A DNA stretch of 64,000 bases. Source: Raja brachyura. Taxonomy: Eukaryota. Position 1 is the stretch's first letter. Every line of letters starts with the position of its first letter. The stretch covers positions 133,362,001-133,426,000 of the forward strand of contig OY740783.1 in NCBI GenBank assembly GCA_963514005.1, read 5' to 3'. Below, in pieces: positions 10,378 to 47,997 of this stretch. The notes beneath the pieces were generated by a model, which was given only the letters and a program-made list of their open reading frames with translations, was not told the DNA's origin and did no database searches. A program made the position numbers and the translations under genes.

Positions 10378-10412
10378 CTACCGACTCGTCACCACCGCGG
10401 CGTAGATCACCT
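10378..10412 (-). CDS. Exon 8, terminal, ITIM VIYAAV: EVIYAAVVTSR*
   Basis: Acceptor ttcttgtgtttcag, phase 1, canonical V-x-Y-x-x-V, TAG stop, non-repetitive 3' UTR with AATAAA about 190 nt downstream. Confidence 0.82.
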
Positions 10413-10829
10413 CTGAAACACAAGAAGCAAATGTTGGTGTAGGTGGGCGCAGTGGCGTGGGAGTGGGGGAAGGGGCAGACCCTTACCACTCACCCTCAGA
10501 GTGGGAACACACGGCAACAGGGCCAGGACTCGAGGGCCTGAGCTATAGGGAGGGGTTAGGCAGGCTAGGACTCTATTAGTTTAGAGACACAGAGCGGAAA
10601 CAGGCCCTTCGGCCCACCGAGTCCGCACCTACCAGCGAACCCCGCACATTAACACTGTCCTACACACTCTGGGGAAAATGTTACATTTATATCGTCAATT
10701 AACCTACAAACCTGTACGTCTTTGGAGTGTGGGAGGAAACCGAAGATCTCGGAGAAAACACGCAGGTCACGGGGAGAACGTGCAAACTCCGTACAGAGAT
10801 GATAAGGAGACCTGTACCCTCCTATCACT

Positions 10830-11400
10830 TGTATGAACATTGACTTCTCTAATTTCCGATAGTCCTTACTTTCTCCTCCCCTTCTCAGCTCTCCCTCTAG
10901 CCCTCTGGCTCCTCCTCTTCCTTTCTTCTTCCCGCCTTCCCACCCTCACATCAGTCTGAAGAAGGGTTTTGGCCCAAAACGTTGCCTATTTCCTTCGCTC
11001 CATAGAGGCTGCCGCACCCGCTGAGTTTCCCCAGCATTTTTGTCTACCTTCATATCACTTGCCAGGTTTTGTTCCGCCCCATCTCTCTCCCAGCTTTCTC
11101 CCCTCTACTACAATCAGTCTGAAGAAGGGTCACAACTCGAAACGTCACCTATCCATGTTCTCCACAGATGCTGCCTGACCCGCTGAGTTACTCCAGCACT
11201 CTGTGAAACGTCACCTATCCATGTTCCCCACAGATGCTGCCTGACCCGCTGAGTTACTCCAGCACTCTGTGAAACGTCACCTATCCATGTTCTCCACAGA
11301 TGCTGCCTGACCCGCTGAGTTACTCCAGCACTCTGTGAAACGTCACCTATCCATCGTCTCCAGTGGTGCTGTCAGACCCGCTGAGTTACTCCAAAACTTT
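10830..11400 (+). mobile_element. Penelope-like 3' ends plus about 4 tandem 66-bp terminal-repeat units
   Basis: MNIDFSNFR* at about 10833, CTGAAGA cores near 10956 and 11119, 66-bp unit gaaacgtcacctatccatg...cagcactctgt. Inverted array at 17290-17485. Confidence 0.7.
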
Positions 11401-11679
11401 GTGAACGGCCCTTCCATAAGCTAGGTGGCTGTCCGATTCACCTCTACCCCATTGCGGACATTGGACTTTGTCTCTGGAACTGATGTGCTACTATGCTGTG
11501 AACTATACTCTGGACTCTGCATCTTATCACCCTCTCGATTATCAGACTACTGGACTCTACCTATTGTATTTGAGTTTGAACTGATTGTATTAACATGTGG
11601 TATATCTGATCTTTTGGATAGCATGCAACACAAAGTTTTTACTCGGTAGCTCAGGACACATGATAATAATAAACCTAAA

Positions 11680-12183
11680 TGTAAACACTCAGACCCAAAA
11701 CGTCACCCATTCCTTCTCTCCAGAGATGCTGCCAGTCTCGCTGAGTTACTCCTGCATTTTGTGTCCATCTTCAATCGTCTTGACCCCGCTCTGGGAGTAG
11801 GAGTGGGGGCGGATCCGATTCCACACTCCTCCACGTCACTCCATGCACACGTCCCACGTTACCCACGGGCTACCAGATCGCGTAAATGGCGCGTAAATGA
11901 CGGCCATGTGGGACGGGCCCTTTAATGTCAAAATTGTCCCCTAGTGTAGGGTAGTGTTAATGTGCGGGGATCGCTGGTCGGTGCGGGCACGGTGAGCGGA
12001 AGGGCCTGTTTCCACGCTGTATCTCTAAACTCAACTAAAGTAAAGTAGGAACAGAATCATTCTCACCTGAGTTTGCAGCTTCAGGTTTCTGCTCACCTGG
12101 AAGTAAAGGAGAATGTGCCATTAGTCAACCAGTCGAACTGTGAGGGATGTGGGAATTGGTGTTGAGAGGAATAGATCGGGTAG
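11680..12183 (+). repeat. Left copy of a 504-bp direct duplication flanking L1
   Basis: Collinear with 16057-16560, roughly 95% identical by eye. Confidence 0.9.
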
Positions 12184-12194
12184 ACGCACAGTCT

Positions 12195-15100
12195 ACCTAA
12201 TTTTGATAATCCGTTGTTTTTTAAGAAAATATTTAACACTATTCCTATAGTTACACAACATAATTTAATAATCGGGGGTGACTTAAATTGTACTTTGGAT
12301 AACTATTTAGATAGATCATCAACTAAAAGGAAGGCTACATCTAAATCAAGTGAATTCATAAATTTGTTTATTAGTTCAGCTAATGTCAAGGATGTTTGGA
12401 GAAATGATAATCCCACTGGTCGGGAATACTCATTCTATTCTCCGGTATTCGGAACTTATTCTAGGATAGATTATTTTTTAAAAGATTCAAAGCTTATCCC
12501 ATTCACGTATGACTCAAAATATCATAATATTATTATTTCGGATCATGCCCCATTAACATTCAAGATTAATTTAAAGGGTATAACTAATAGATATTCGCAA
12601 TACAGGCTCAATCCTCAAATATTAAGTGATAAGGCTTGTTATGATTATCTGGTTAAACAGATTGAACTATTCTATGAGACTAATGATAAACCTGGAATTT
12701 CTTCGTCTCTTCTATGGGACACATTTAAAGCTTTTATACGTGGTGCTATAATATCTGCGCATGCACACCTTAGTAAGGAAAATCGAAAGATTCAACAGAA
12801 TTTGGAAAATGAAATAAAGCAATTAGACATGGAAAATGCTATATCACCATCTAGGGTGATATATAACAAAATGGCAACATTAAAATATAAGTTAAATGAG
12901 ATACAATCAAAGTATGTTATTAAACTTTTTCAACAGACTAAACAAGTACATTTTGAATTTGGGGATAAACCACATAAACTGCTATCTCGTCAACTTAGAA
13001 AATCAGATGAAGAAAAAATGATATATAAAGTTAGATCTGAACAAGGAGAAATACTAACTTTACCAAAAGATATTAATGATAAATTCCAGCAATACGATCA
13101 AAAACTTTATACATCCAAACTGACGGGTCAATCTGATGGAATGGAAGCATTCCTACATGAATGTCATATTAATGGATTAGATCAGGAAGGAAGAGACTTG
13201 CTAGACGCTGAAATATCAGCAAAAGATATTGAGGAATCAATCAGATCATTGAAAAATGGTAAAGCTGCTGGTCCCGACGGTTTAGGTGTTGAATTTTATA
13301 AGAAGTTTCATGATTTGATTTCCCCACATCTACAAACAATATATAAAGATGCCTATGAGCAAGAACAGCTACCAGAAACCCTAAATGAATCTACAATTAT
13401 ACTCATTCCTAAAGTAGATAAAGATCTGGAAGATCCAGGATCATATAGAGCAATTGCTCTTCTAAATAAGGATCAAAAAATATTAACTAAAATTTTATCT
13501 CAAAGGTTAAGTTTAGTGATCAATAAATTAATACATCATGATCAAACAGGCTTTATCCCTAAACGCTATTCTACTTATAATTTGCGACGTCTATTCAATA
13601 TCATATATTCAAAAATAATTAATAATATTGAATTAGCTGTTATATCCCTGGACGCAGAAAAAGCATTTGACCAGGTTGAATGGCTTTACTTATTTAGGAT
13701 AATGCAGAAATTTCAACTGGGGGAAGGATTCTCTAAATGGGTTAGAATTTTATATTCTGGCCCAACAGCAAGAATCCTAACAAATCAAATGTTATCAGCC
13801 AAATTTAATCTCTCTAGGGGTTGTAGACAAGGATGTCCGTTATCACCTTTATTATTCGCTCTTGCAATAGAATTATTAGCCGAAAGGATTAGATCGGAAC
13901 CAGAAATGTATGGATATAACACCAATACCACAATTAATAAAATATCTTTATACGCAGATGACATCTTAATATATATAACAAAACCAGAGATTAGTATTCC
14001 TAAGTTACTTAATGTTATAACTGAATTTAGTATGTTCTCAGGATATAGAATTAATTGGAATAAAAGTGAAATTATGCCTATAACAGGAATAAAATTGAAT
14101 AAATTACAAAAATTTCCATTCAAAATAGTTAATGACCAAATTAACTATCTTGGAGTTAATGTATCCAAATCTTATAATTCTCTATTTAAATCAAATTTCC
14201 CCCAATTACTAAATAAACTAAAAAATAATATTTTATATTGGAAAACATTACCAATATCAATGATCGGCAGAATAAATGCCATTAAAATGATTTTTTTTTT
14301 AACCACAACTACTATATTTATTTCAAGCTATCCCGCTATATCTTCCTAAAACTTAAAAAAAAATTGATTTCATTGTCAATAGCTTTATTTGGGATTATAA
14401 AAATTACAGATAAGTAAAAGACATTTATGTAAATCTAAGATAAATGGTGGACTAGCACTACCTAATTTTTCATATTATTTCTGGGTGGTTCAGATTAAGA
14501 ATATGAATTTTTGGTTGGTAAACATGGATCAGGACCCAGCTTGGTTAAAAATGGAAAAGGAAGATTGTTTACCCTTTGATATAAGTACAATACTCCTTGC
14601 CCCAAGGGTGGTACAAAAAAAATTATAGGGAAAATCCTATAATTTTAAGAAATATACGTATTTGGAAACAAATAGTTAAGACTTTACATTTAGAAAATAT
14701 GTCGCTTTGCTTACCAATTATGAATAATCCTCTGTTTAAGCCCTCTTTATTGGATGGGGGGTTTAGACATTGGAAAAATTTAGGAATTATAAGGATAGAA
14801 CATCTTTACAGGAATGGGAAATTTCTCTCATTTCAAGAGTTAAAAGATATTTATGGATTGCACTCAAATAACTTACTTAGATATTTACAGATCAAAGATT
14901 ATGTTAAATCGAAAAAAACAAGATTATAGAAATAGAGAACCAGGTTTACTGGATGAAGTGCTTAATAAGCATCCAAACACAGAGAAATTAATAGCATATA
15001 TATATATAACATCCTTTTGGACAGGGAAATACCAACAACAGAATTATTTCGACAAATATGGGAAAATGAAACTGGTTTACCGATATTAAAAGACCTTTGG

Positions 15101-16055
15101 GAAGAACGTTTACAAAGAATACATCGTTGTTCGTTAAATGCCAGACATACTTTGATACAATTCAAAGTATTGCATAGATTACATTATTCAAAAAAGAAAT
15201 TAAATAGAATTTTTCCTAATATATCCCCATTGTGTGATAAATGTCAGCACATAGAAGCTGATTTAACACATAGTTTTGTAACATGCACAAAACATAATAG
15301 TTATTGGACTGAGATTTTTAAAATTATTTCTATAGTTCTTAAGATTATATTAAATCCTGACCCAAAGCTAATAATATTTGGTGTTTTAGATTCAAATCAA
15401 ACATTAACAGTAAATCAAAGACATTTTCTTGATTACTGTTTAATGATTGGAAGAAAAATAATATTAAAATTCTGGAAGGGACCATTATCCCCTACAATCA
15501 AAATGTGGACAGTGGAAATGTAGGAGACATTGCAATTGGAGAGAATTAGGTTTATCCTAATGGATAAACACAAACTTTTTGAACAAATATGGTCTCCATT
15601 CACTGATTATATGAAGGGGTAGCTGGGCTCAGCATTAAAACTCAACAAGTACCCGGTGGTAAGATCAGATGAAAAGGTTTAATCCGAGATTTGTATACTT
15701 GTCTCTATATATATATTATTAGAAATTGTTCCATTCATCGTTAAGATGTATACTTTTTTTTATTTTTAAGTATAATAATTGTTTGTCAGTAATATCGGTT
15801 TTTAATTTTTTTATTTTTTTAATTAATTTTTTTTTTCTTCTCACATATAATCAAAATTATAATCATACTTTTTAAATTAAACATCTATTTTTTCTTTACT
15901 CTTTTTTCTTTTCACTCTTAAAAAAAATTGAGGCTTATATATATTTCTTTGTAATATTCATATAACTTTGGAAATATATAATATGTATATCTGAAAAAAC
16001 TGTTATATTATTTGTAATACGTATGGCCTCTAATAAAAATACATTAAAAAAAAAA
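12195..16055 (+). mobile_element. 5'-truncated L1 LINE (ORF2: partial APE, RT, C-terminal zinc knuckle), 3' UTR and poly(A)
   Basis: 711-aa ORF with SRIDYF, SDHAP, SLDAEKAFD, GCRQGCPLSPLLF, LYADD. Later frameshifts, CDKC..H..C, AATAAA at 16032, A-tail 16046-16055. Confidence 0.95.
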
Positions 16056-16056
16056 T

Positions 16057-16560
16057 TGTAAACACTGAGACCCAAAACGTCACCCATTCCTTCTCTCCAG
16101 AGATGCTGCCGGTCTCGCTGAGTTACTCCTGCATTTTGTGTCGAGCTTCAATCGTCTTGACCCCGCTCTGGGAGTAGGAGTGGGGGTGGATCTGGATACA
16201 CACTCCTCCACGTCAGTCCATGCGCCCGTTCCACGTTACCCACAGGCTACCATATCGCGTAAATGGCGCGCAAATGACGGCCATGTGGGACGGGCCCTTT
16301 AATGTCAAAATTGTCCCCTAGTGTAGGGTAGTGTTAATGTGCTGGGATCGCTGGTCGGTGCGGGCACGGTGAGCGGAAGGGCCTGTTTCCACGCTGTATC
16401 TCTAAACTCAACTAAAGTAAAGTAGGAACAGAATGATTCTCACCTGAGTTTGCAGCTTCAGGTTTCTGCTCACCTGGAAGTAAAGGAGAATGTGCCATTG
16501 GTCAACCAGTTGTACTGTGAGGGATGTGGGTATTGGTGTTGAGAGGAACAGATCGGGTAG
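16057..16560 (+). repeat. Right copy of the 504-bp duplication
   Basis: Starts immediately after the L1 A-tail and continues into a CR1 3' fragment. Confidence 0.9.
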
Positions 16561-16752
16561 TCTCTTGCCCAGAGGTGGTGAATCAAGGACCATAGGACAT
16601 AGGTTGAAGGTGAAGTGAAAAAGATTTAATAGGAATCTGAGGGGTAACTTTTTCACACACAGGGTGGTGGATGTATGGAATGAGCTGCCAGAGGAGGTAG
16701 TTGAGGCTGGGACTATCCCAACATTTAAGAAACATTTAGACAGGTACATGGG

Positions 16753-16978
16753 TGTAGATTAGTGTCACTTATTTCATGAGTCATGCTTCTGTAGTTACGC
16801 CCACTAGCTTTTCAGTTATAACTGCTTGCTGGATTCCTTTAGTGTAAGTTGAACTTGCAAATGTGAAGTCATGCTTGCTATGTAGTTAATAAAGTCTTTG
16901 GATCTTTATCTTGGTGCAAGGCTTCTGTTATTGTCTGGTCATCACTCAACATGGTGCCAGAAGTGGGATTGGAACCCA
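16753..16978 (+). mobile_element. About 200-bp LTR (TG...CA) plus tRNA-Leu primer-binding sequence, no internal region
   Basis: TGTAG...CAACA, AATAAA at 16888, then TGGTGCCAGAAGTGGGATTGGAACCCA (16952-16978). It interrupts a CR1 3' fragment. Confidence 0.7.
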
Positions 16979-17126
16979 TTTTTTAGGACAGGTTTGGAGG
17001 GATATGGACCAAACATGGGCAGGTGGGACTAGTGTAGCTGGAACATGTTGGCCGGTGTGGGTTTAGTTGGGCCAAGCGGTCTGTTTCCACGCTGTATCAC
17101 TCTATGACTGTGAGCAAGGTGTGTAC

Positions 17127-17204
17127 CTTCATCATCTGCCTGCGGCTTCTTCGCTTTTCCACTGTTGATGATAATGCTGGCGTACGTGCAGGATTCAGCC
17201 TGAT
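17127..17204 (-). CDS. Exon 7, cytoplasmic with ITIM-like CTYASI: DQAESCTYASIIINSGKAKKPQADDE
   Basis: Acceptor tgtgctttacag, donor AAG|gtaca, 78 nt, phase 1-1, YxxI motif. Confidence 0.8.
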
Positions 17205-17236
17205 CTGTAAAGCACACGAGAGTTACTCCTTCAAAC

Positions 17237-17272
<36 letters not shown>

Positions 17273-18970: not shown

Positions 18971-20078
18971 TTCTGGGCAGCACGCAAAGCTAAAGCTTTT
19001 CACCGTACCTCGGTACACATGACAATAATAAACCTGAGCCTGAACCTTCAGTGGGATCCTAACCTGGACTGTTACCCATCCGTGTTCTCCAGGGATGACG
19101 CCTGACCCGCTGAGGGGGGGGGGGGGGGGGGTGCGTGAGGGGCAAGTCAGTCGTTATGTCTATGGTGGAGATTAGTATGTTCTTGATTAGGTTGGTTGGT
19201 AAAATTGTAAATTGTCCCCAGTGTGTAAGATAGTGCTAGCGCACAGGGTGATCGCTGGTCGACGCGAACTCGGTAGGCCAAGGATGGTGTGTGTAGGATG
19301 GTGTTAATCTGTGGGGAGACGTTCTCTGGGTTGCCCGACCAAGCTTGGAACACAAATTAGATCACAGCACTGACCCAAACTCTAACGCTCACCTGCCTCG
19401 CCGCTATTGGACACCACATTATTGTCACGCTCTGTAACACCAATCAGTCTTAGAATGATACAGCGTGGAAACAGGCCCTTCGGCCCAACTTGCCCACACC
19501 AACCAACATGCCCCATCTACACTAGTCCCACCTTTCCTATTCATGTACCTGTCCAAATCTTATTTTAAACATTATGATAGTAGCTACCACCTCTGGCAGC
19601 TCGTTCCACACACCCAGCACCCTCTGTGTATAAAAATTGCCCCTCAGATTCCTATTAAGTCCTTCCCCTCTCACCTTAAACCTATGTCCTCTAGTTCTTG
19701 ATTCCCCAGTTGGGGTAAAAGACTGCATTTACTCTATTCCTCTCATGAGAATCATAATTTCATAAGTGATAGAAGCAGAAATAGGCCATTTGGCCCATCG
19801 AGTCTACTCCACCATTCAATCATGGCTGATCTATCTTTCCCTCTGAACCCCATTCTCCTGCCTTCTCCCCATAACCTTTGACACCTGTACTGTCAAGAGA
19901 CTGTCGATCTCTACCTTAAAAATACCCGATGTCTTGGCCTCCATCACCGTCTGTGGCAATGAGTTCCACATCATAGAATCCTCTCAAGGAATACACCCAT
20001 CAAGTCGGTGCTAGCCCCTCTTCCCATTAAACTTATCCTTGCTCTCAGAGCCTTGAGAATTGACCCCACGACCCAGGT

Positions 20079-20536
20079 TGTTGTGTGAAACCTTGTTTGA
20101 AATGTTTATACTACCGGGGAAAGTGTTGCATTACTTTAGTGAACTGACTTCCTTCCAGAAGCTTCTGTTGAAACATTGTAATGGGGAACTTTGTAATTGG
20201 TTTAGGGAACTGTCAATAACTGTACAATGTAATCAATATTTGTGATTGGTTTGTAGGGGCGCCACAGGGTAAGATGACCTATAAAAGAGTGGACCCCACG
20301 AGGATTGGAGTCGATCTTCTGGAGGGGCACTCTGGACTGCGTAAACCTTTGGAGGTGTCCGCTTGCACGAGGCTGAAGGGCTTAAACGATCAGAGACAAG
20401 GAATGGACCCGCGGTGGTTAGGCATTGTATAGGGAGTTTGCTATTGTTGGAAAGAATAAAGAATAGTGATCCGGCGTTTGACTCAGTGTTTTACTGAACT
20501 AGACTAAAGGGGGTAAGCTTTAGGAGTATAATTACA
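20079..20536 (+). mobile_element. Probable solo LTR
   Basis: TG...CA ends, TATAAAA at about 20280, AATAAA at 20455. No clear TSD. Confidence 0.45.
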
Positions 20537-20830
20537 CACACGCAGAAACCCCAAGCGGTCACGGGGAGAACGTACAAACTCAGTACAGGCGGCATTATAG
20601 CCAGGATCGAACCCGGGTCTCTGGCGCTGTAAGGCAGCGACTCCAATGCTGCACCACTGTGCCGCCCCAGTTATTCCAGCCCTTTGTGTCTTTTATTTTG
20701 CAAACCAGCATCTGCATTTCCTCGTGTGCAGTCCCGTACTGTCTCCACCCTCCATTTGCTACCTGTAGCCCTCCTGTTGGTTTTGGTCTGCTTGCTGCCT
20801 TGGACAGGGTAGAAGATGCTCGCTCAGTAC

Positions 20831-20886
20831 CTGAATCACACTGCAGCTGTGCCCCTCGGCCAGTGTCATCCGGACTCACAGCGCTC
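20831..20886 (-). CDS. Exon 6, cytoplasmic: SAVSPDDTGRGAQLQCDS
   Basis: Acceptor tcctctctctgtag, donor CAG|gtact, 56 nt, phase 2-1. Confidence 0.72.
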
Positions 20887-21548
20887 CTACAGAGAGAGGA
20901 ACCAACGTGAGGAAATTGCATCAAACGCCCAGAAAATCTCATGGCAATCCACAGATCTCGGAGGGTGCTTAGCACAGTGAGTATATTAAATTGTACTTTG
21001 GAGATACAGTGCGGAAACAGGCCCTTCGGCCCACCGAGTCCGTGCTGTACACTAGCACTACCCTACGCAGTAGGGACAGTTTATAATTTTACCAACCAAT
21101 TAACCTACAAACCCGTACACTTGTATGATGTACAATAATGAGAGGCATGGATATGGTAGACAGTCAAAACCTTTTTACCCAGTGTGGAAATGTGCAACGC
21201 TAGACTTTAGACACACAGTCACACAGCGTGGAAACAGGCCCTTCGGCCGAGCGAGTCAACGCCGACCAGCGATCAGCAGTACAAGAGCACTATCCTACGC
21301 ACTCTACTAGGGACAATTTACAATGCAGAGAAGCCTATTATCCTACAAAGCCGTACGTCTTTGGAGTGTGCGAGGAAACCGTAGCACCCGGAGAAAACCC
21401 ACGCGGTCACGAGGAGAACGTACAAACTCCGTACAGACGGCACCCGTAGTCAGGATCGAACCCGGGTCTCTGGCGCTGTGAGGCAGCAGCTCTACCCGCT
21501 GCGCCACCGTGCCACCCCGCTTAGCCTTGGATTCATGTCCCCTATTAC

Positions 21549-21588
21549 CTTTTTGAAAATGTGGCTGACCTCATTATGGATGAAAACA
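21549..21588 (-). CDS. Exon 5, cytoplasmic: VFSSIMRSATFSKR
   Basis: Acceptor tctttattcctgcag, donor AAG|gtaat, 40 nt, phase 1-2. It supplies the phase change needed to reach exon 6. Confidence 0.75.
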
Positions 21589-21699
21589 CTGCAGGAATAA
21601 AGAGATGAGAAAAGATTAAGGTAATGGCTGACATCACCATTGTATAACAAATGTAGAATAATAAAGATTCATCAAAGTTACAGCCCAAAGGCAATCTCC

Positions 21700-22012
21700 A
21701 ACCCCTCACCCACTCCCCCCCCACCCACTGCCCACCCACTGCCCCCCCTCACCCACTGCCCCCCCCTCACCCACTGCCCCCCCTCACCCACCTTAACCAC
21801 TCCCCCCCCTCACCCACTCTTCTCCCCTCACCCACTCCCCACCCACTCTCCCCCCCTCACCCACTCCCCCCCTCACCCACTCTCCCCCCCCTCACCCACT
21901 CTCCCCCCCTCACCCACTCTACCCCCCTCACCCACTCGCCCCCCCTCACCCACTCGCCCCCCCTCACCCACTCTTCCCCCCCCCCCACCCATTCCCCCCC
22001 CCCCCACCCACC
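21700..22012. repeat. C-rich minisatellite (cccccctcacccact)n
   Basis: Visible tandem units between exons 4 and 5. Confidence 0.9.
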
Positions 22013-22305
22013 GGTCCTTGATTATGCCGGTGGTCTTGCCGAGGCAGCGTGAAGTGCGGACGTCCGATTAAAGACAAACGATAGCACATAAGCAAATGCT
22101 GTCTGAAGAAAATGCTGTCTGTCTCGACCCGAAACGTAGATTATCTCCTTCGCTCCTTTGATGCTGCTGCACCCGGTGAGTTTCTCCAGCTTTTTGTGTA
22201 ACCCCCAGCACATAAGCAAAGCTGATCGCTGCATCCCGGTGCAAGGGACAATAATAATCGATAGCAGACAGAGAATTGCAATGGCTTATTTGTAGGTCAA
22301 CTCAC

Positions 22306-22401
22306 CTCCTTTCTTCCAGAGAATAATAATGAGCAGGATGCAGAGCATGAGGAGGGCAATCAGAATGAGCAGGATGTACATTGATGTCCCTGTTGGTGTC
22401 A
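22306..22401 (-). CDS. Exon 4, transmembrane: VTPTGTSMYILLILIALLMLCILLIIILWKKG
   Basis: Acceptor cttttttacag, donor GAG|gtgag, 96 nt, phase 1-1. About 21 uncharged hydrophobic residues followed by KK stop-transfer. Confidence 0.9.
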
Positions 22402-24766
22402 CTGTAAAAAAGAGCAGTGAAGACCAGGAGATCAGTAGGCCCATGTGTTCACACCCGGCCTTAACATATGATCAATGATGATCCATCAAATAACTCGGAT
22501 GTGGGAACGCCATTTCTAACTTGCTTATGAATTAAGGTAAATGATCTAAATTTAGTTTCATTTATTTTAGAGATAGAGCGTGGAAACAGGCCCTTCGGCC
22601 CGCCGGGTCCACATGGACATCATTACCACTGTCCTACACACACATTAGGGACAATGTTTACATTTATACCAAGCCAATTAACCTACAAACCTGTACATCT
22701 TTGCAGTGTGAAAGATCTTGGCGAAAACCCACGCAGGTCACGGTGAGAACGTACAAACTCCGTACAGACAGCACCATACTCGGGATCTACCCCAGATCTC
22801 CGGCACTGTAGAGCAGTAACTCTACCGATGTGCCACCGTGCTGCCCTAAATGACGAGACTGGAGGGTGGCAAATGTTGTGCCTCTATTTAAGAAGGGTGG
22901 CTCGAAAAGTCCGGGAACGACAGGCCGGTGAGTCTAACTATCTGTGGTCAGAAAGTTACGAGACAGTATTCTGAAGGATAAGGTGCACTGTCTGAACAGT
23001 CCTTCCATGAGATAGGGTACTGTCCAAATCACCTCTACACCATGGCGGACATTGGACTAGACTGAATGACCAGAGATGTAAAGGGTCTTGGGAGTGCTGG
23101 TGCAGGTTTCCCAAATCGTTAATCTGCACGTTGAATGGGTGGTATGGAAGGAAAATGCAATGCTACATTTATTTCGAGAGGACTATAATACAAAAACAGG
23201 GATGGAATGCTCTACAAGGCACTGGTCAGAATGCATTTGGAGTATTGTGAGCAATGTTGGGCCCCATATCTGAGGAAGGATGTGCTGGCTCTGGAAAGGG
23301 TCCAGAGGGGGTTTACGAGAATGATCCCAGGAATTATTTATATTTAATGTTTAATGTTCATTGGGTTAACATATGATGAGCGTTAGGACGGCACTGGGCC
23401 TGTACTTGCTGGAGTTGAGGATGGGGGGGGGTACTCACCGAATAGTGAAAGACCTGGATAGAATGGAATGTGGAGATGATGTTTCCACTAGTGGGAGAGT
23501 CTAGGATCAGAGGCCATAGCCCGAGTATAAAATAATGTGCCTTTAGGAAGGAGTAGAGGCGATATTTCGTGAGTCACAGGGTAGTGAATCTGTGGAATTC
23601 ATTGCCACGGACGACCATGGGGGCCAAGTCAATGGATATTTATTAAGGCTGAGATTCAGATTCTTGACTGGCATTGGTATCAGGGGTTATGGGGAGAAGG
23701 CAGGAGAATGGGGTTGAGAGGGAAAGACAGATCAGCCGTGATTGAATATCAGCCGATGATAGGGTGATCATAAAGGCTTTTGGCACATTGGTCTTCATCA
23801 GTCAGAGTATTGAGTATGGAAGTTGGGAGGACATGTTACTGTTGTATAAGACATAGGAGAGGCCACATTTGGAATATTGTGTTCAGTTTTGGTCACCATG
23901 ATACGGGACTGTCTGAACAGTATTGCCTTCCACCACAGTGAAGAATGCTGTGGTGGATGTGCGTTGAATTATGTTGTGTACTATGTCCTTTTTTAATTGT
24001 AACACTGCACGGTAAATCACATTTAACTGCACCTTATGGTGCATGTGACAAATACATTTGAACTTGAACTATGCTGTCAAGCTGGAAAGGTTGCAGAGAT
24101 GATTTGTAAGGGTGTTGCCAAGGATGTGACTTGACATACTGAGCTGTAGGGAGACATGAGCAGGCTAGGACATTATTCCTTGGGGCGCAGGAGGATGAGG
24201 GGTGATCTTATAGAGGTGTATAAAAATAATGAGAGGAATAGATCGGGTAAACATACACAGTCTTTTGTCCAGAGTTGGGGAATCCAAAACCACGTGACAT
24301 AGGTTTAAGGTGAGGTGGGAAAGATTGAATAGGAATCTGAGGGGTGACTTTTTTTACACAAAGATTGGTGGGTGTAAGGAAAGAGCCGCAGGAGGAGGTA
24401 GTTGAGGCAGGGATTCTTGCAACATTTAAGAGGCATTTAGACAGGTTCTTGGGGAGGATAAGTTTAGAAGGATAGGGCCAAATGCGGACAGGTGGGACTC
24501 GTGTTGATGGGGCATGTTGGTCGGCGTGGGCAAGATGGGCAGAAGGGCCTGTGACTCTCTACGACTCTATGAATAACGACTCACTGGTTCGGACTCCATC
24601 AGTCGGTCTGACTCTGGGAGTGACACACACGGCATTGAGCGCAAGGGTCCGGGCACGGGAGAGGAAGCTTCACTGATCGGCACATGTGTGGGGGTGGGGT
24701 GGGGTGGGGTTCAGACAAACTATTGACCTTCGCTCTACACGGCAGAATGTGGCGATGGTTTCTTAC

Positions 24767-25174
24767 CGGGTGTGACCTGGAGCTGGACCTCACGCTGGTA
24801 CTGATGGGTGTACGGGGGGTTTACGCTGCCAGTGAAATCTACGTGGATGTACACTGTCGGTTTGTAGTTTTCCGGTTTGCTGAACTCCACCAGACACAGG
24901 TAGCCGTGACTGTCCTCCATACTCAGCTGGTTTATCCTGGTTGAGGCACTTCCCAGCTCTGGGTCCCCGACCAGCACGAACCGAGTTGCTCCGTTCACCG
25001 CCACCCTGGATCCATTAGCTTTGGGTGTGAACGTGACGATGTGTCGGTAGGGATCCTTCCTCATCCATGTGACCGTGAGGTTGCTGGGGTAATGCTGGGG
25101 TTGTTGATACACACAGGGTAATGTAGCCGAACCTCCCACAGTCCCAGCCACCACTGAGACATTCTCGCCGGGCG
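24767..25174 (-). CDS. Exon 3, second V-set Ig domain (V2) with long F-G loop
   Basis: Acceptor ccttccctcag, donor CCG|gtaaga, 408 nt, phase 1-1. GGSATLPC, VTW, RFVLVGDP..GSASTRINQL..EDSHGYLCLVEF, LQVT are V-set hallmarks. Confidence 0.92.
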
Positions 25175-25633
25175 CTGAGGGAAGGACAGACACCAGAATG
25201 TATCAGTTGAACCTCGCCGACCGCAATCAACAAACTTATCGGGGAAAGAATCGAATCTTAAAAACTGTCCCACAGAACCCAACCAGCCAAACTTGTAGAC
25301 TCAAGGAACTGCAGATGCTGGAATCATGAGCAAAAAAGAAAGTGCTGGAGGGACTCAGCGGGTCAGGCAGCATCTTTTATGCTATTTTATTTTAAAGATA
25401 CAGCGTGGAAGCAGGCCTATCGGCCCTCCGAGTCCGTGCCGACCAGCAATCATCCCACTCAGGAGACCTTTTAAGCCCCTTTAAGCCCCTGTCCCACTGA
25501 GAAGATCTAAACAGCAACCTCTGGAGACCTTGCCCGCCACCCAAGGTTTCCGGGTGCTCCGATCTCCTGCCACACTCCAAACATATGCAGGTTTGTAGGT
25601 TAATTATCCCTAGTGCGTGTAAGGTAGTGTTAA

Positions 25634-26671: not shown

Positions 26672-27903
26672 AGCCCCTGTCCCACTTAGGAAACCTGAAC
26701 GGAAACCTCTGGTGACTTTGCCCGCAACCCAAGGTTTCCATGAGGTTGCCGGAGGTTTTGGTCACTCTCCCTAATGGTCGAAAGTGGTTTCCACTTGGTC
26801 GAGGCTTCATCTAGGTTGCTGCTATTTTTTATCATGTTTAAAACCGACCTCGACTAAAAATAGGTTGCCATTTTAAAAATCAATAATTTTTTAGTCGCAG
26901 GTCTATTCAAAGCCGGTTTTCTTCACAGTCGAGGAAGGTTTTCAACATATGTGTACGAGGTGGTAAGAGGTTGCAGGTCACCTCGACCTTGATTGTTTTT
27001 TGGGTGGCGGGCAAGGTCACCAGAGGTTGCTGTTTAGGTCTTCTAAGTGGGACAGGGGCTTAAAGCCTCTGTCCCACTGAGAAAACCTGAACGGAATGTA
27101 CTGGTGACCTTGCCCGCGACTCAAGGTTTCCATGAGGTCGCTGGAGGTTTTGGTCACTCGCCTGGAAAGTGTCGAGCTGGATCAACCGAAGNNNNNNNNN
27201 NNNNNNNNNNNNNNNNNNNNNNNNNNNNNNNNNNNNNNNNNNNNNNNNNNNNNNNNNNNNNNNNNNNNNNNNNNNNNNNNNNNNNNNNNNNNNNNNNNNN
27301 NNNNNNNNNNNNNNNNNNNNNNNNNNNNNNNNNNNNNNNNNNNNNNNNNNNNNNNNNNNNNNNNNNNNNNNNNNNNNNNNNNNNNNNNNNNNNNNNNNNN
27401 NNNNNNNTAAACGGCTGCCACAGAACACGGTAAGTCATTTAGACAGGGGGCGGGGGGGGGGGGGGGTGAGAAGCATAGAGAAGCAGAGAGAAGGGGAGAG
27501 AGAAGGAGAGAGCAGGGGGAGATAAGGGAGAGAAAACTGGGGAGAAGGGGGGGAGAAGGAGTGGGGACAGTTTTAAGAAGTTTAGCGGGCATTTTACCTA
27601 CAGGTGGGTCTTCTTGAGCCAATCAAAATGGCCGGTCAGCGAAGGAGATGGCCTTCGACTGCCTGTAAGTAAACAGCGAGCCCACTCCACTGGCTTCAAC
27701 CAAACCGCAACCTATTTTTAGTCGAGGCCGGTTTTGATTTTGTTGAAACAATCGAAGCAACCTAGATGAAGCCTTGACCAAGCGGAAACCACTTTTGACC
27801 ATTAGGGAGAGTGACCAAAACCTCCGGCGACCTCATGGAAACATTGTGTCACGGCAAGCTCACCAGAGGTTTCCGTTCAGGTTTCCTAAGTGGGACAGGG
27901 GCT
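26672..27903. mobile_element. Two abutting PIF/Harbinger-like MITEs (26672-27060 and 27064-27903)
   Basis: AGCCCCTGTCCCACT TIRs separated and flanked by TTA/TAA. Confidence 0.75.
27192..27407. other. Assembly gap (intron 2, within a MITE)
   Basis: Run of N. Confidence 1.
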
Positions 27904-32200: not shown

Positions 32201-32740
32201 GGTGTGCCGTTTTGGTCCCCTTATTTGAGGAAGGACATTCTTGCTATTGAGGGAGTGTAGCAAAGGTTAATTCCCGGAATGGCGAGACAGTCGTATGCTG
32301 AGAGAACGGAGCGGCTGGGCTTGTATACTCTCGAATTTAGAAGGATGAGAGGGTATCCCATTGAAACATATATGATTATTAGGAGTTTGGACACGCTAGA
32401 GGCAGGAAATATGTTCCCGATGTTGGGGGAGTCCAGAACCAGGGGCCACAGTTTAAGAATAAGGGGTAAGCCATTTAGAATGGAGACGAGGAAACACTTT
32501 TTCTCACAGTGCGTTTTGAGGCTGTGGAATTCTTTGCTTCAGAGGGCAGTGGAGGTCGGTTCTCTGAATACTTTCAAGAGAGAGCTAGATAGGGCTCTTA
32601 AAGATAGCGGAGTCAGGGAATATGGGGAGAAGGCAGGAACGGAGTACTGATTGTGGATGATCAGCCATGATCACATTGAATTGCGGTGCTGGCTCGAAGG
32701 GCTGAATGGTCTACTCCTGCACCTATTGTCTATTGTCAAG
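29215..32740 (+). mobile_element. Near full-length degenerate CR1 LINE (SGNH-esterase ORF1 remnant plus APE-RT ORF2)
   Basis: VVGNSIVRG...VHVGTN esterase blocks, VMGDFN, SDHN, NYRPVSLTS, LDFQKAFDKV, GVPQGSVLGP, KFADD, (ctattgt)n tail. Many stops and frameshifts. Confidence 0.93.
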
Positions 32741-33751: not shown

Positions 33752-34144
33752 CTTCCACAGTCAGCTGCGTGAGAATCGCAGATTGAAATTTCCCAACAGT
33801 GAGCTCCACGCGGCACCGGTAGTTATCACTGTCCTTCTCTCTCAGTGGCTCCACCATTATCGAGGCATCTCCCTCTGTGAGGTTCCCCATGAATTTGAAC
33901 CGACCTCCTCCGGCATTCTGTGTCACTTCATCACATCGGGAGTGGCCGGGACCGGCATATGTGCAGTTAATCACAAGGCTGGGAAGCTTGGGAGTCTTTG
34001 ATGGCAACTTGTGCCACATCACGGAGCCGGTGACGTTGTCATCAGTGGGTGGGTAGGTGAATGTACACGGCAACACAGCAGGGGCCCCTTCCATGGCAGA
34101 TACCTCAACAGCACTGGACATTGTCCAACCACTTTGTGAAACGT
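33752..34144 (-). CDS. Exon 2, Siglec-15-like V-set Ig domain (V1)
   Basis: Acceptor (ct)n-ccag, donor GAAG|gtgag, 393 nt, phase 1-1. WTMSSAVEVSAMEGAPAVLPCTFTYP...VMW...INC...SRC...GRFKFMGNLTEGDASIMVEPL...DSDNYRCRVEL follows the Siglec-15 V pattern (WSM..EVSA..G..AVLPCTFTHP, extra Cys pair, RF..LGN...D.SL, YFCRVE). Confidence 0.92.
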
Positions 34145-43776: not shown

Positions 43777-44008
43777 AGGGCCTGTCCCACTTTCACGACC
43801 TAATTCACGGCCTCTGCCGAGTTTGCCCTTGACTCATACTCGCAGCATGGTCGTCACGAGTGCGTAGTAGGTAACCTGTAGCAGGTCGTAATGCTAGTCG
43901 TAGGTACTCGTGGCATCAAGTAGGTTGAGGCGTTTTTTCTAGCATGATGAAAAATGTCCACGAGTAAAAAAAGGTCGTGAATTCGGTCGAGAAAGTGGGA
44001 CAGGCCCT
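43777..44008. mobile_element. PIF/Harbinger-like MITE
   Basis: AGGGCCTGTCCCACTTTC TIRs at both ends. Confidence 0.78.
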
Positions 44009-47000
44009 TTAATTTCAGTGTCAGAGACACTGACGGCATGGGATCACTTTACTAAAACATTTTTGGACCGAATAGTTGTGATTTATTCCTTCGTGGTCAT
44101 TTCAGCTTGAATATTCTGTGGATGTTCTATACAGCTGTGCATTCAACACTATAATCCCAACCTCGTTCATCACAAAACTCCAGGATCTGGGAATCAGCTC
44201 CATCCTCGGCCACTGGATTCTGGGCTTTCTGACCCACACAGCACAGTCAGTGAGGAGAGGTAACAAAACTCCTCTACGATGATCCTCAATGCCAGTGTCC
44301 TGTAAGGATGCATGCTCATAAGTTCATAAGTTATAGGAGGAGAATTGGGCCATTCGGCACATCGAAGGGCCGAATGGCCTACTCCTGCACCTATTGTCTA
44401 TTGTGTCTACTCCACCATTCAACCATGGCTGATCTATCCTTCCCTCTCAACCCCATCCTCTTGCCCTCTCCCCGTAACCCTTGACACCCTTACCAATAAA
44501 GTTTCTGTCAATCTCCACCTTAAAGATGTTCAAGAAGGAACTGCAGATGTTGGAAAATCGAAGGTAGACAAAAATGCTGGCAGCATCTATGGAACAAAGG
44601 AAATAGGCAACGTTTCAGGCCGAAGAAGGATTCAGTCTGAAGAAGGGTTTCAGCCCGAAACGTTGCCTAATTCCTTCGCTCCATAGATGCTGTCGCATTT
44701 TTGTCTACCTCCGCCGTAAAGATACTCATTGGCGACCACCACAGCCCTCTGTGGCAATGAACTCCGCAGATTCACTACCCTCTGGCTAGAGAAAATTCCT
44801 CCTTATCTCTGTTTCAGAGGTACGACCTTTTTTTTATGATGCTGCGTCCTCTGGTTCTAGACTCTCCCACTAGTGGAAACATCGTCTCCACACCCACTCT
44901 ATCCAGGCCATTCTATGGAATGCCCCGAGATTTTTTAGACAGAGTAGGGGAATTAAAAATCAGAGGACACAGTTTTAAGTGAGGAGAACCAGATGGGCAT
45001 TTTTTTTGTAAAAGAGTGGTGGGTATGTGGAACGAGCTGCTGGAGGAGGTAGTTGAGGCAGGTATTATCACAACGTTTAAAGAAACATTTGGACAAGTAC
45101 CTGGATCGGAAAGATTTAGAGGGATATGGGCCAAACGCGGGCGGATGGGACTAGTGCAGATGGGGCACGGTGCGCGGCATTGGCAGGTCGGGCTGAAGGG
45201 CCTGTTTCCTCTCTCTATACCTAAGGATAGCACACAAACATAGGTTTTCACTGAATCTAGGTACACGAGGCAATCAAATAGCAGAAGCAAAGTTAAGGTG
45301 GACTCAACGTCACATTTACGAAGGAGTTGCCTACGTATTTGCAAAAGAAGAATGAGCAGGATTCCTCTTCGTGCGTTTGAGGCAGTAGAGGTTATGTAAC
45401 GGCCTCCAGGCGCTGTCGCCACTTCAATGTGCTGTTGTCGAGGGCCGTGATGTCTAACCCTCCACCGGGGGGGCTGAGGTGGAGACCTCACCAGCAGAAT
45501 TGAGCGGGAGGCTGACGTGGCTGGATTGCTTTTGCAGCGAGCCAGTACGATCACAATGGGAGGAATGGCCTCTTTCCATGCTGTAATCAATCTGTGATGC
45601 TGTACAGAAACTTTGTTGTTCAGTACCTTTCAACTGATGCCCTGAGACAGCGTTTATAGCAAAGCACCAGGAAGAAGGGTCCCGACCCGGATCGTTCCCT
45701 GCCCATGTTCTTCAGGGATGGCACAGTGAACTGATGGTAGAGTTGCTGCCTCACAGCAGCAGAGACCCGGGTTTGATCCTGACTGTGGGTGCTAACTATA
45801 CAGAGTTTGCACGTTCTCCCTGTGATCGCCTGGGTTTTCTCCGGTTTCCACCCACGTGCAGGTGTGTAGGTTAATTGGCCTGTGTAAATTGTCCCTAGTG
45901 TGTAGGACAGGACTAGTGTGAATGGGTGATTGATGGTCAGGGCAGGGCTTGGTGGGCCAGAAGACCTGATACCATGCTGTATCTCTACACCAAACGGAAC
46001 TAAGATGCGGCCTGATCCACTGAGTTACTCCAGCACTTTGTGTCCATTTTGGTAAACCAGTAACTGCAGGTCCTTGCGTCTAATGTTTAGATTTCCCAAC
46101 GTAGTCATCTTGCTCAGGCCCACAATATCTGTGCTGAACATGATGCCATCCTCTCCCGAAAGCTCAGCCCCTCGAGTCCTGGCAACATCCTGGTAAATCT
46201 TCACTGCTCCCTTTCCAGCTTGGCAACATCTTTCAAATAACATGGTGACAAAACCTGAACACAACACTCTAAATGTGGCCTCACCAACGTCTTGTGCAAC
46301 TGTCACATGATCTCCCACCTTCTACACTCAATACTCAGACTGATGAAGGCCAATGTGCCAAAGAGCCTCTTTGACCAAACTATCTACTTTATATATCACT
46401 TTCAAGGAACTATGTACCTGCATTCCTGGATCCCTCTACTCCACCACATTCCCCAGAGATCTACCCATCACTGTGTAGGTCCTGCCTTTGTCAGTTCTCC
46501 CAAAATGCAACACCTCACATTTCTCCGCATTAAATTCCGTCAACTATTCCTCAGCCCACCCGCCCAACCGATGAAGATCCTGCTGCAATTTCTGACAACC
46601 ATCTTCACAATCCACAATACCACCAATGTTGTGTCATCTATAAACTTGCTAATCGTGCCTTGTACGCTCTCATCCAATATAGACAATAGGTGCAGGTGTA
46701 GGCCATTCGGCCCTTCGAGCCAGAACCGCCATTCAAAGTGATCATGGCTGATCATCCCCAATCAATCCAAATCATTGATATCGATAACAAACAACATTCA
46801 GCTACCTTCCCTATGATCCCATGCGATCTAGCCCTTCCAGAGCAGCCTATTGCTCTGGACTTATTGCACAGGGTTTATTCTTGTGACGTGTACCGAGGTA
46901 CAGTACAAAGTTTTGTTTTGCACGCTATCCAATGGGATCAGATAATACCACACATAAATACAATTAAGGCAAACTCCAGTACAATAGGTAGAGCAAAGGG

Positions 47001-47936
47001 GAAGATACAGAGTGCAGAATATAGTTCTCAGCATTGTAGCACATCAGTTCCAGAGACAAAGTCCAATGTCCGCAATGGGGTAGAGGTGAATCGGACAGTA
47101 CCCTAGCTTATGGAAGGACCATTCAGAAGCCTGATAACAGAGGGGAAGAAGCTGTTCCTGAGTCTGGTGGTGCGCGCTTTCAAGCTTCTGTACCTTCTGC
47201 CGGACGGGAGCGGTTTCAGAGGAGTTTAGTTTAGAGAAACAGGATGTAAACAGGCCATTCGGCCAGCCAAGTGATCACCCATAGACTCTTCTATCCTGCA
47301 CACAAGGGACAAGTTACAGAAGCCAATTAACGTACAAAACCCACGCATCATTGGAGTGTGGGAAGAGACCGGAGCGCCCAGAGGAAGTACGTTGTGGTCA
47401 AGGGGAGAACGTGCAAACTCCGTACCGGCAGCACCCAAGCTCAGGATCAAACCCGGGTCTCTGGCGCTGTAAGGCAGCAACTCTATCATGCCCTAAAGTT
47501 ATTGCAGGAATTACTAACCACAGAGCTACACAACGTTGTTGATGTACTGAGTGAGAGCCTGCTTTAATTTTAGAGATCCAACATGGATACAGGCCCTTCA
47601 GCCCACTAAGTCCATGCTAACCATCGACCAACCGTTCACACTGGTTCAACATTATTCCGCTTTCTCAACCAGTCCCTACAAACCAGGGACAAAATACAGG
47701 GCTAATTAACCCACAAACACACACGTCTTAGGGATGCAGGAGGAAACCGGAGCACCCGGAGAAAACCCAAGCTGTAGCAGGGAAAAGCGCGCATACTTCA
47801 CGCAGAGAGCAACCGAGGTCAGGATTTAACCAGGGTCTGTGAGGCAGTGGCTCTACCCGCTGCACCACCGTGCCACCCTGTTCCTGAGTCCGGTGGCGAC
47901 AACAAGGAGAGAATCAGGTCAAGAGAAAACACTCAC

Positions 47937-47997
47937 TGCAACCGTGGACTGAGACGGAGAGCAGGACGGTGCAGAGACAAATTCGGAGAGAGCACAT
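47937..47997 (-). CDS. Exon 1, signal peptide MCSLRICLCTVLLSVSVHGC
   Basis: ATG in gcgATGT context, hydrophobic core, V-H-G cleavage-type motif, strong donor GCA|gtgagt, phase 1 matching the V1 exon. Confidence 0.8.

What the first reader, a model, noticed from the sequence alone, without database searches (positions are those of the whole stretch)
10378..47997. Siglec-15-related receptor with inverted signalling logic: tandem V-V ectodomain, neutral TM, two inhibitory-type motifs
Seen in sequence: an intact 8-exon, 388-aa model hidden among repeats (leader and TM exons are absent from the ORF track). Established: Siglec-15 is V plus C2 with a TM lysine coupling to DAP12, and Siglecs generally have one V-set followed by C2-set domains. 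This gene has a Siglec-15-type V1 but a second V-set, no C2 domain, no charged TM residue, and CTYASI plus VIYAAV. Inference: an elasmobranch inhibitory sialic-acid receptor, possibly one arm of a paired activating/inhibitory family built on the Siglec-15 domain. It could overlap with the skate MDIR modular receptors, which I cannot exclude.
Basis: partly seen in the sequence, partly recalled or inferred. Interest (0 to 1): 0.85.

Follow-up and report, generated by a model that had tools for sequence, protein, structure and literature searches.

The report
Inhibitory Siglec-15-like V-V receptor gene
This is an intact skate-type gene for a two-V-domain membrane receptor with an inhibitory-type tail, one member of a large, so far undescribed family of paired activating and inhibitory receptors in sharks and rays that is related to the sialic-acid receptor Siglec-15.

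Summary
The gene is real. It lies on the minus strand from 47997 to 10378. Every exon has canonical splice sites, every exon is phase 1-1, and the order matches RefSeq models of little skate (LOC129695285) and thorny skate (LOC116971354).

Homology favours a 408-aa product. The N gap (27192-27407) lies in the intron between the two V exons and does not affect the reading frame.

- **Ectodomain:** both V exons match human Siglec-15 V best, by sequence and by predicted fold. V1 keeps the four-Cys pattern and the essential Arg. V2 has Leu there and a long, disordered F-G loop.
- **Membrane and tail:** the TM segment has no charged residue. VIYAAV is a canonical ITIM. CTYASI is only ITIM-like.
- **Family:** it is large. 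Of 93 elasmobranch representatives, 37 are inhibitory-type and 29 carry a TM Lys. The two types are mixed on the V1 tree. V2 is shared with chondrichthyan V-V-C2 "Siglec-15" proteins, so the derived step is loss of the C2 domain.
- **Not shown:** no transcript, sialic-acid binding or SHP recruitment.

I found no paper on this family. The scan's first-stage notes flag relatives elsewhere in this genome.

The parts
47937..47997 (-). Exon 1: start codon and signal peptide (MCSLRICLCTVLLSVSVHGC plus 1 nt), donor CA|GTGAGT
   Evidence: Sequence. 84-89% identical to the leaders of skate homologues. This donor gives SVHGCNVS, which aligns with SVHGYNIS in P0003.
33752..34144 (-). Exon 2: V1, a Siglec-15-type V-set domain with four Cys and the Arg in YRCRVE
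   Evidence: Pfam V-set 1.6e-9. Best PDB hit Siglec-15 7zoz at 1.2e-7, with the Cys and Arg aligned. AF2 pLDDT 87.7. Foldseek top hit 7zoz_A. Starred elasmobranch D1 clade.
27192..27407 (.). Assembly gap inside intron 2, between V1 and V2; not filled
   Evidence: Homologues join V1 directly to V2. There is no family exon or credible TM exon between 25175 and 33751.
24767..25174 (-). Exon 3: V2, a V-set domain with Leu in place of the Arg (YLCLVEF) and a long F-G loop
   Evidence: Pfam V-set 1.6e-11. Best PDB hit Siglec-15 V at 2.2e-10. In the AF2 model the G strand is residues 122-134 and residues 103-119 have pLDDT below 50. Foldseek top hit 7zoz_A. Starred D2 clade.
22306..22401 (-). Exon 4: short stalk plus an uncharged transmembrane segment MYILLILIALLMLCILLIIILW, then KKG
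   Evidence: Hydrophobicity scan, sequence, 73-77% identical to the skate homologues.
20831..20956 (-). Exon 5 (cyt1): DLWIAMRFSGR...SPDDTGRGAQLQCDS. The acceptor CCGAG|AT is the only phase-1 AG in the open frame.
Evidence: Sequence and frame check. The C-terminal 18 aa are 89-94% identical to skate homologues.
17127..17204 (-). Exon 6: DQAESCTYASIIINSGKAKKPQADDE, carrying the ITIM-like CTYASI
   Evidence: 86-89% identical to the skate homologues.
16444..16473 (-). Exon 7: 30-nt mini exon GEQKPEAANS
   Evidence: Splice and motif scan, sequence. Matches GGQKPEA[EA]NS in P0003 and P0197.
12067..12096 (-). Duplicate mini exon with identical coding letters. It lies in a 508-bp duplication (11677-12183 = 16053-16560, 95% identical) that flanks a LINE. 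It could be an alternative or additional exon.
10378..10412 (-). Last exon: EVIYAAVVTSR plus TAG. VIYAAV is a canonical ITIM.
   Evidence: 92% identical to the skate homologues. AATAAA/ATTAAA signal at about 10188.

Best explanation
This is an intact gene for a type I membrane receptor of about 408 aa. It belongs to an elasmobranch-wide multigene family of paired receptors derived from the Siglec-15 lineage.

Shown:
- The ectodomain is V1 followed by V2. V1 is a Siglec-15-type V-set with the same four Cys and the essential F-strand Arg. V2 is an older second V-set domain shared with chondrichthyan V-V-C2 Siglec-15 homologues. V2 has no Arg and carries a long flexible F-G loop.
- There is no C2 domain.
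- The TM segment is uncharged.
- The tail, about 90 aa, carries CTYASI (ITIM-like) and a C-terminal canonical ITIM, VIYAAV.
- Sibling genes in other elasmobranchs put nearly the same ectodomain on a TM segment with Lys (IPLGLK) and a very short tail.

Inferred:
- V1 binds a sialylated ligand through the Arg.
- Src-family kinases phosphorylate the tail tyrosines, and SHP-1/2 dock on them.
- The receptor thereby damps ITAM signals, including those of the TM-Lys siblings, which would pair with a DAP12-type adaptor.
For: - **Gene model:** canonical, phase-compatible exons collinear with RefSeq proteins of two skates.
- **Siglec-15 relation:** the best PDB sequence hit for both V exons is Siglec-15, and so is the best fold hit. 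The Arg and the four Cys align. PMC7226832 describes R143 and these Cys as conserved Siglec-15 features.
- **Domain tree:** V1 and V2 each sit in a strongly supported elasmobranch clade. The V2 clade is sister to the second domain of Mobula, Callorhinchus and Heptranchias V-V-C2 proteins.
- **Paired family:** 37 inhibitory-type and 29 TM-Lys forms among 93 representatives. Signalling type needs 9 switches on the V1 tree. Horn-shark activating and inhibitory V1 domains are nearly identical. Within little skate, the inhibitory and activating proteins are 77% identical, against 74% for the cross-species orthologue.
- **Tail:** the motifs are conserved across sharks and rays, and CTYADI and VTYAVV are seen in salamander relatives.
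Against: - No transcript evidence. No RNA run held the exons, and the runs that were laid covered only repeats.
- The window's own protein is not among the database hits.
- The cyt1 acceptor is modest, and two donors are possible.
- CTYASI is not a canonical ITIM.
- The Arg is necessary but not sufficient for binding. PMC7226832 reports that cloned zebrafish Siglec-15 bound the tested glycans poorly.
- The V1 clade is not resolved from lamprey 'Siglec-12' and sawfish PILR-like domains in the tree.
- In such fast-evolving clusters, individual copies are often silent.
Confidence: 0.7

Rival explanations
1. The receptor is real and inhibitory, but its ligand is not sialic acid. In this reading the family is a pathogen-driven paired-receptor system that recognises proteins or other glycans, and the retained Arg is structural or inherited.
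For: Several family members replace the Arg with S, G, H, Q, K or Y, mostly activating forms: 14 of 21 scored activating forms keep it, against 28 of 30 inhibitory forms. The V domains evolve fast, at 65-72% identity between skates while the tail is 85-94%. V2 has a long variable F-G loop at the CDR3 position. PMC7226832 reports weak glycan binding for zebrafish Siglec-15.
Against: The Arg is retained in nearly all inhibitory forms. That fits an inhibitory arm that sees a conserved self ligand. The closest solved folds after Siglec-15 are sialoadhesin and Siglec-7 lectin domains.
Confidence: 0.3
2. This particular copy is a silent or decaying member of the cluster: open frame, but not expressed or not correctly spliced.
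For: No RNA support was obtainable. The second CTYASI exon found in the little-skate and thorny-skate proteins is missing here, and a LINE sits between the two mini-exon copies. The cyt1 acceptor is weak and sits in a region with an apparent 13-aa insertion relative to the little-skate protein. An upstream out-of-frame ATG lies 89 nt before the start codon.
Against: No stop or frameshift in any of the coding exons. All splice sites are canonical. All invariant and near-invariant family residues are present in V1 and V2. Little-skate isoform X3 also has a single CTYASI exon.
Confidence: 0.15
3. It is a member of the skate MDIR (modular domain immune-type receptor) family described in 2006.
For: MDIRs are a skate multigene family described as activating/inhibitory receptors (PMC3031540). 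From my memory of the 2006 abstract, not checked here, their Ig-domain number varies. Some members of the present family are auto-named 'polymeric immunoglobulin receptor-like'. V2 hits pIgR domain 4 at about 2e-6.
Against: PMC3031540 places MDIR domains with CD300/TREM/pIgR. The CD300 V type has a YWCR motif in strand C and a second disulfide there. The window has VMWHKL in V1 and VTWMRK in V2, and V1's extra Cys pair aligns with Siglec-15's. No CD300, TREM or pIgR chain is among the 60 best PDB hits of V1. None of the 89 relatives of the little-skate protein carries an MDIR name.
Confidence: 0.05
4. The model is a chimera: V1 and V2 belong to two neighbouring genes, or the scaffold is mis-joined at the N gap.
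For: An assembly gap lies between the two V exons, and 8.6 kb separates them. All exons are phase 1-1, so any join stays in frame.
Against: Dozens of RefSeq proteins from many species have V1 joined directly to V2. There is no leader, TM or tail exon of the family between the V exons, and no second gene of the family in the window. Exon order and strand are consistent on both sides of the gap.
Confidence: 0.03

Closest known systems
Little skate LOC129695285 (XP_055488062/63/65) and thorny skate LOC116971354: RefSeq 'uncharacterized protein'
   Same: Same exon order and architecture: leader, V1, V2, neutral TM (YILPILILLLMLCILLIIILW), cyt1 with SPDDTGRGAQLQxDS, CTYASI exon, GxQKPEAxNS mini exon, EVIY[AS]AVVTSR end. 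Identity is 65-72% in the V domains and 85-94% in the tail.
   Different: Most skate isoforms carry two CTYASI-plus-mini units (X3 has one). The window has one CTYASI exon and two mini exons around a LINE. The window's cyt1 is about 10 aa longer. The V domains are too diverged to call strict orthology.
Human and other bony-vertebrate Siglec-15
   Same: V1 shares the four-Cys pattern, the xCRVEx Arg, and motifs such as AVLPCTFT(H/Y)P and GRF(R/K). It is the best sequence and fold match for both V exons.
   Different: Siglec-15 is V plus C2, with a TM Lys for DAP12 and no ITIM (PMC7226832). This gene is V plus V, without C2, with a neutral TM and an ITIM tail. It is a relative, not the orthologue.
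Chondrichthyan V-V-C2 'Siglec-15' homologues (Mobula XP_062903801, Callorhinchus LOC103174418, Heptranchias XP_067838218)
   Same: The same two kinds of V domain in the same order. Their second domain groups (92/70) with the window's V2 clade. The Heptranchias form has a neutral TM and ends in AAIYAAV.
   Different: They keep a membrane-proximal C2 domain, and their V1 forms a separate clade. They are the better candidates for true Siglec-15 orthologues.
CD33-related inhibitory Siglecs
   Same: They work alike in outline: an Arg-bearing V-set lectin domain on a neutral TM with two tail tyrosine motifs. From my memory, not tested here, the CD33 ITIM reads LHYASL, which resembles CTYAS(I/L).
   Different: They have C2 domains and a different disulfide pattern, and the canonical ITIM is membrane-proximal. 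Their PDB similarity to V1 is much weaker (about 1e-3). PMC7226832 reports that teleost genomes lack them.
Skate MDIRs (Cannon et al. 2006)
   Same: A skate multigene IgSF family with activating and inhibitory members.
   Different: PMC3031540 describes MDIR domains as CD300/TREM/pIgR-like. The window's domains lack the YWCR hallmark and match Siglec-15 instead. I could not compare the sequences directly.

Membership tests
Siglec family | N-terminal V-set Ig domain carrying the essential F-strand Arg | tested here: met
   Pfam V-set. The Arg of YRCRVE aligns with the Arg of YFCRVE in human Siglec-15. The AF2 model places it in the F strand, residues 106-114.
Siglec family | One or more C2-set domains after the V-set domain | tested here: not met
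   The second domain is V-set. tblastn with C2-bearing relatives finds no C2 exon or relic in the window.
Siglec family | Demonstrated sialic-acid binding | not testable with these tools
   Needs recombinant protein, sialidase treatment and an Arg mutant.
Siglec-15 (orthologue) | Transmembrane Lys that couples to DAP12/DAP10, with a short tail lacking an ITIM | tested here: not met
   The TM segment MYILLILIALLMLCILLIIILW has no charged residue, and the tail is about 90 aa with VIYAAV.
Siglec-15 (orthologue) | Siglec-15-type four-Cys pattern in the V domain | tested here: met
   LPC, INC, SRC and YRC align with LPC, FRC, ELC and YFC of 7zoz_A.
Siglec-15 (orthologue) | V domain groups with Siglec-15 V domains in a tree | tested here: inconclusive
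   V1 lies on the same side of a 92/84 branch as the bony-vertebrate Siglec-15 V domains. The branching among these, the lamprey 'Siglec-12' and sawfish PILR-like domains, and one turtle protein is unresolved. No CD22, MAG or CD33 sequences were available by reference.
Elasmobranch V-V paired receptor family (LOC129695285 type) | Collinear leader, V1, V2, TM and tail exons, with both V domains inside the family clades | tested here: met
   for collinearity. V1 clade 100/99, V2 clade 100/100.
Paired activating/inhibitory receptors | Closely related ectodomains on opposite signalling modules within a species | tested here: met
   37 inhibitory-type and 29 TM-Lys forms. 9 switches on the V1 tree, and horn-shark forms of both types are nearly identical in V1. 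This was shown in other species. For this genome there are only unverified scan notes.
ITIM-bearing inhibitory receptors | (I/V/L/S)-x-Y-x-x-(L/V/I) in the cytoplasmic tail | tested here: met
   VIYAAV fits. CTYASI has Cys at -2 and does not fit the consensus quoted in PMC7226832.
ITIM-bearing inhibitory receptors | Tyrosine phosphorylation and SHP-1/SHP-2 recruitment | not testable with these tools
   Needs pervanadate treatment and co-precipitation.
MDIR | CD300/pIgR/TREM-type Ig domain (YWCR in strand C, second disulfide there) | tested here: not met
   Strand C reads VMWHKL in V1 and VTWMRK in V2. The hallmark is taken from PMC3031540. The PDB ranking favours Siglec-15.
MDIR | Sequence identity to MDIR1-5 of Raja eglanteria | not testable with these tools
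No MDIR-named protein is among the 89 relatives.

The most novel reading that the evidence does not exclude
The Siglec-15 lineage was, in the gnathostome ancestor, a paired inhibitory/activating family with a V-V-C2 ectodomain. Mammalian Siglec-15 is the lone surviving activating arm. Cartilaginous fishes, and partly salamanders, lungfish and coelacanth, kept and expanded both arms. The inhibitory arm, with CTYAx(I/L) repeats and a terminal VxYAAV, would then be the ancient fish counterpart of the CD33-related inhibitory Siglecs that fishes are said to lack, and possibly related to them.
Probability: 0.25. Interest if true: 0.75.

Novelty: new variant of a known kind. Interest (0 to 1): 0.55.

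Why it matters
The literature treats Siglec-15 as a single, conserved, purely activating Siglec, and fishes as lacking inhibitory CD33-type Siglecs (PMC7226832). This gene and its relatives suggest otherwise. In sharks and rays the Siglec-15-type lectin domain sits on dozens of genes, about half with ITIM tails and half with a DAP12-type Lys. The ectodomain is V-V, which no described Siglec has.

If binding and signalling are confirmed, three things follow:
- cartilaginous fish would have a sialic-acid self-recognition checkpoint system built independently of the CD33 family;
- the age of inhibitory Siglec signalling could be tested directly;
- the inconsistent automatic names now in RefSeq (Siglec-15, -12, -10, CD33-like, sialoadhesin-like, pIgR-like, JAML-like, HAVCR1-like, A33-like) could be replaced by one family name.

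Tried and rejected
- **Transcript evidence:** The look-up of sequencing runs with the V2 exon found no run on record as RNA that holds it. Laying four runs on 19600-25400 showed the three possible RNA runs covering only repeats, with zero depth over the V2 and TM exons. The fourth run (X3) is DNA of a related species and crosses the V2 acceptor into the intron. No junction could be tested.
- **Closed or missing sources:** The MDIR paper and a related review are not held.
- **Literature:** searches for Siglec-15 or Siglec with shark, cartilaginous fish or elasmobranch, for paired receptors, and for MDIR found nothing on this family.
- **Splice choices rejected:** the acceptor TGTAG|G at 20886 for cyt1 is phase 2 and runs into a stop after the phase-1 TM exon. 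The leader donor CACG|GTTGCA loses the HGC-N alignment to homologues.
- **Second gene or C2 relic in the window:** none found.
- I sent the joined spliced product to no search or folding tool. Exons were searched one by one by reference. The only joined computation was a frame, stop and length check in a script.

Full report
**Observation**

The minus strand between 47997 and 10378 holds a spliced receptor gene. Two long open frames carry V-type Ig exons, at 34322-33708 and 25193-24735. The motifs CTYASI and VIYAAV lie at 17173-17190 and 10393-10410. A hydrophobicity scan finds one transmembrane exon, at 22393-22334.

Reading the nucleotides gives these exons:
- leader 47997-47937 (donor CA|GTGAGT)
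- V1 34144-33752
- V2 25174-24767
- TM 22401-22306
- cyt1 20956-20831
- CTYASI exon 17204-17127
- a 30-nt mini exon at 16473-16444
- last exon 10412-10378, ending in TAG

Every boundary is AG/GT and every exon is phase 1-1. That symmetry means an open frame alone proves little. The weight rests on homology.

**Homology to annotated genes**

An exhaustive search with V1 found 181 relatives, 9 of them below 1e-30. The best are RefSeq proteins of skates, rays and sharks. tblastn of little-skate LOC129695285 isoforms against the window finds the exons in the same order:

| Exon | Identity | E-value |
|---|---|---|
| leader | 84% | 3e-4 |
| V1 | 67% | 1e-49 |
| V2 | 72% | 3e-55 |
| TM | 73% | 7e-8 |
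| cyt1 | 94% | 1e-5 |
| CTYASI exon | 89% | 5e-10 |
| last exon | 92% | 0.4 (12 aa) |

The 30-nt mini exon was not among these hits. I placed it by a splice-site and motif scan, and it matches GGQKPEAENS of the skate protein. Thorny-skate LOC116971354 gives the same exon order as the little-skate protein.

The homology-supported product is 408 aa, or 418 aa if the duplicate mini exon at 12096-12067 is also used. That choice removes the conserved SPDDTGRGAQLQCDS block.

The obvious acceptor TGTAG|G at 20886 is out of phase. The acceptor at 20956 matches the family's exon start just before a conserved Trp.

**The gap**

The gap at 27192-27407 lies in the V1/V2 intron. Homologues join V1 directly to V2: the window reads TVE-A-PGENVSVV and thorny skate reads TVE-A-PGGNVSVV. 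No family exon or credible TM exon lies between the V exons. Exon order and strand agree on both sides.

**The domains**

Both exons are V-set by Pfam. For both, the best solved-structure match by sequence is human Siglec-15: V1 at 1.2e-7 and V2 at 2.2e-10.

- **V1 alignment.** V1's four Cys and the Arg of YRCRVE align with those of Siglec-15. PMC7226832 describes these Cys and this Arg as conserved Siglec-15 features, and the Arg (R143) as essential for sialic-acid binding.
- **V1 model.** AlphaFold2 models V1 with confidence (pLDDT 87.7). Its best fold match is Siglec-15, followed by the sialoadhesin and Siglec-7 lectin domains.
- **V2.** It has Leu at the Arg position. Its model has nine strands, with the G strand at residues 122-134 and a low-confidence F-G loop at 103-119. 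Siglec-15 V is again the best fold match.
- **C2.** No C2 exon or relic exists in the window.

**The family**

Searching with the little-skate protein returns 89 proteins below 1e-10 from more than 20 elasmobranch species. All carry only automatic names: uncharacterized, Siglec-15, -12, -10, CD33-like, sialoadhesin-like, pIgR-like, JAML-like, HAVCR1-like and A33-like.

A census of 93 representatives gives:
- 37 with a neutral TM and tails carrying CTYAx(I/L) and/or a terminal V(I/T)YAxV
- 29 with a TM Lys in an IPLGLK-like context and tails of 6-49 aa
- 19 with no TM detected
- 8 unclassified

On a tree of V1 domains, signalling type needs 9 switches. Horn-shark activating and inhibitory forms have nearly identical V1 domains. 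Within little skate, the inhibitory and activating proteins are 77% identical, against 74% for the thorny-skate orthologue. This is the signature of paired receptors. The Arg is kept in 28 of 30 scored inhibitory forms but only 14 of 21 activating forms.

**Deeper relations**

In a tree of 61 domains:
- The window's V1 sits in a 100/99 elasmobranch clade and V2 in a 100/100 clade.
- The V2 clade groups (92/70) with the second domain of V-V-C2 proteins of Mobula and Callorhinchus (both with a TM Lys; the Mobula one and an older Callorhinchus record are named Siglec-15) and of Heptranchias (neutral TM, tail ending AAIYAAV).
- So the V-V tandem is old in cartilaginous fishes. This subfamily lost the C2 domain.
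- The V1 clade lies with the bony-vertebrate Siglec-15 V domains, but it is not resolved from lamprey 'Siglec-12' and sawfish PILR-like domains.

Salamander proteins have tandem Siglec-15-type V domains with CTYADI and VTYAVV tails. A coelacanth V-C2 protein has CTHADI. The inhibitory tail may therefore be ancient rather than an inversion of Siglec-15 signalling.

**Mechanism**

Shown: the architecture, the retained Arg, the neutral TM, one canonical ITIM (VIYAAV) and one ITIM-like motif (CTYASI, with Cys at -2).

Inferred:
- V1 binds a sialoglycan.
- The tail tyrosines are phosphorylated and recruit SHP-1/2.
- The receptor opposes its TM-Lys siblings, which would signal through a DAP12-type adaptor.

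None of this could be tested here.

**MDIR**

PMC3031540 places MDIRs with CD300/TREM/pIgR, and the CD300 V type carries YWCR in strand C with a second disulfide. The window's strand C reads VMWHKL in V1 and VTWMRK in V2. V1's extra Cys pair is the Siglec-15 one. No relative carries an MDIR name.

**What failed**

- No RNA run holds the exons.

**Scan context and verdict**

The scan's first-stage notes (unverified) describe related tandem-V activating and inhibitory genes elsewhere in this genome. One is a TM-Lys cluster about 12 kb beyond the window's end.

Verdict: a real, probably functional inhibitory member of an undescribed but already annotated Siglec-15-related paired receptor family.

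Noticed in passing
window 48012-48086 (-): An upstream ATG opens MKKHFERLLYFSDKEL..., 52% identical to the N-terminal extension of the horn-shark 'Siglec-15' model (MKKHFDQLLYFGVKRH...). Here it lies 89 nt before the leader ATG, so it is out of frame. If transcribed, it would be an overlapping upstream ORF.
   Followed up: partly
window 11677-12183 and 16053-16560: A 508-bp duplication (95% identical) carries the 30-nt mini exon in both copies and flanks a LINE (RT ORF 12214-14349). The little-skate and thorny-skate proteins have two CTYASI-plus-mini units. Here the second CTYASI exon is missing.
   Followed up: partly
window 24767-24870 (V2 F-G loop): The long F-G loop of V2 (about 23 residues, low pLDDT) is present in skates and rays but short in sharks (for example Mustelus and Heterodontus proteins). 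It is variable in sequence and sits at the CDR3 position.
   Followed up: partly
window 12214-15523, 29799-32650, 50097-53790, 59183-63581: LINE-type elements with reverse-transcriptase and endonuclease ORFs fill the introns and flanks. No other host gene was found in the window.
   Followed up: yes
window 54681-55126: A second assembly gap (446 N) lies outside the gene.
   Followed up: no
window 22294-22586 and 24929-25370: A 2024 DNA run of a related species (X3) holds the V2 exon and its upstream intron at about 93-94% identity. It also holds a TM-exon contig at about 91% identity, with most of the differences listed lying inside the TM exon.
   Followed up: no
proteins P0031, P0037, P0139, P0026, P0002 (not in the window): Salamander 'Siglec-12' models are tandem Siglec-15-type V domains with CTYADI and VTYAVV tails. 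Coelacanth 'Siglec-15' has a neutral TM and CTHADI. Lungfish has a V-V-C2 form with a TM Lys and a protein with seven matched V-domain stretches. On the tree, the lungfish and salamander tandems look like lineage-specific V1 duplications.
   Followed up: partly
family census: Activating (TM-Lys) members lose the V1 Arg more often than inhibitory members (7 of 21 against 2 of 30). This pattern is expected if the activating arm drifts away from the self ligand.
   Followed up: partly
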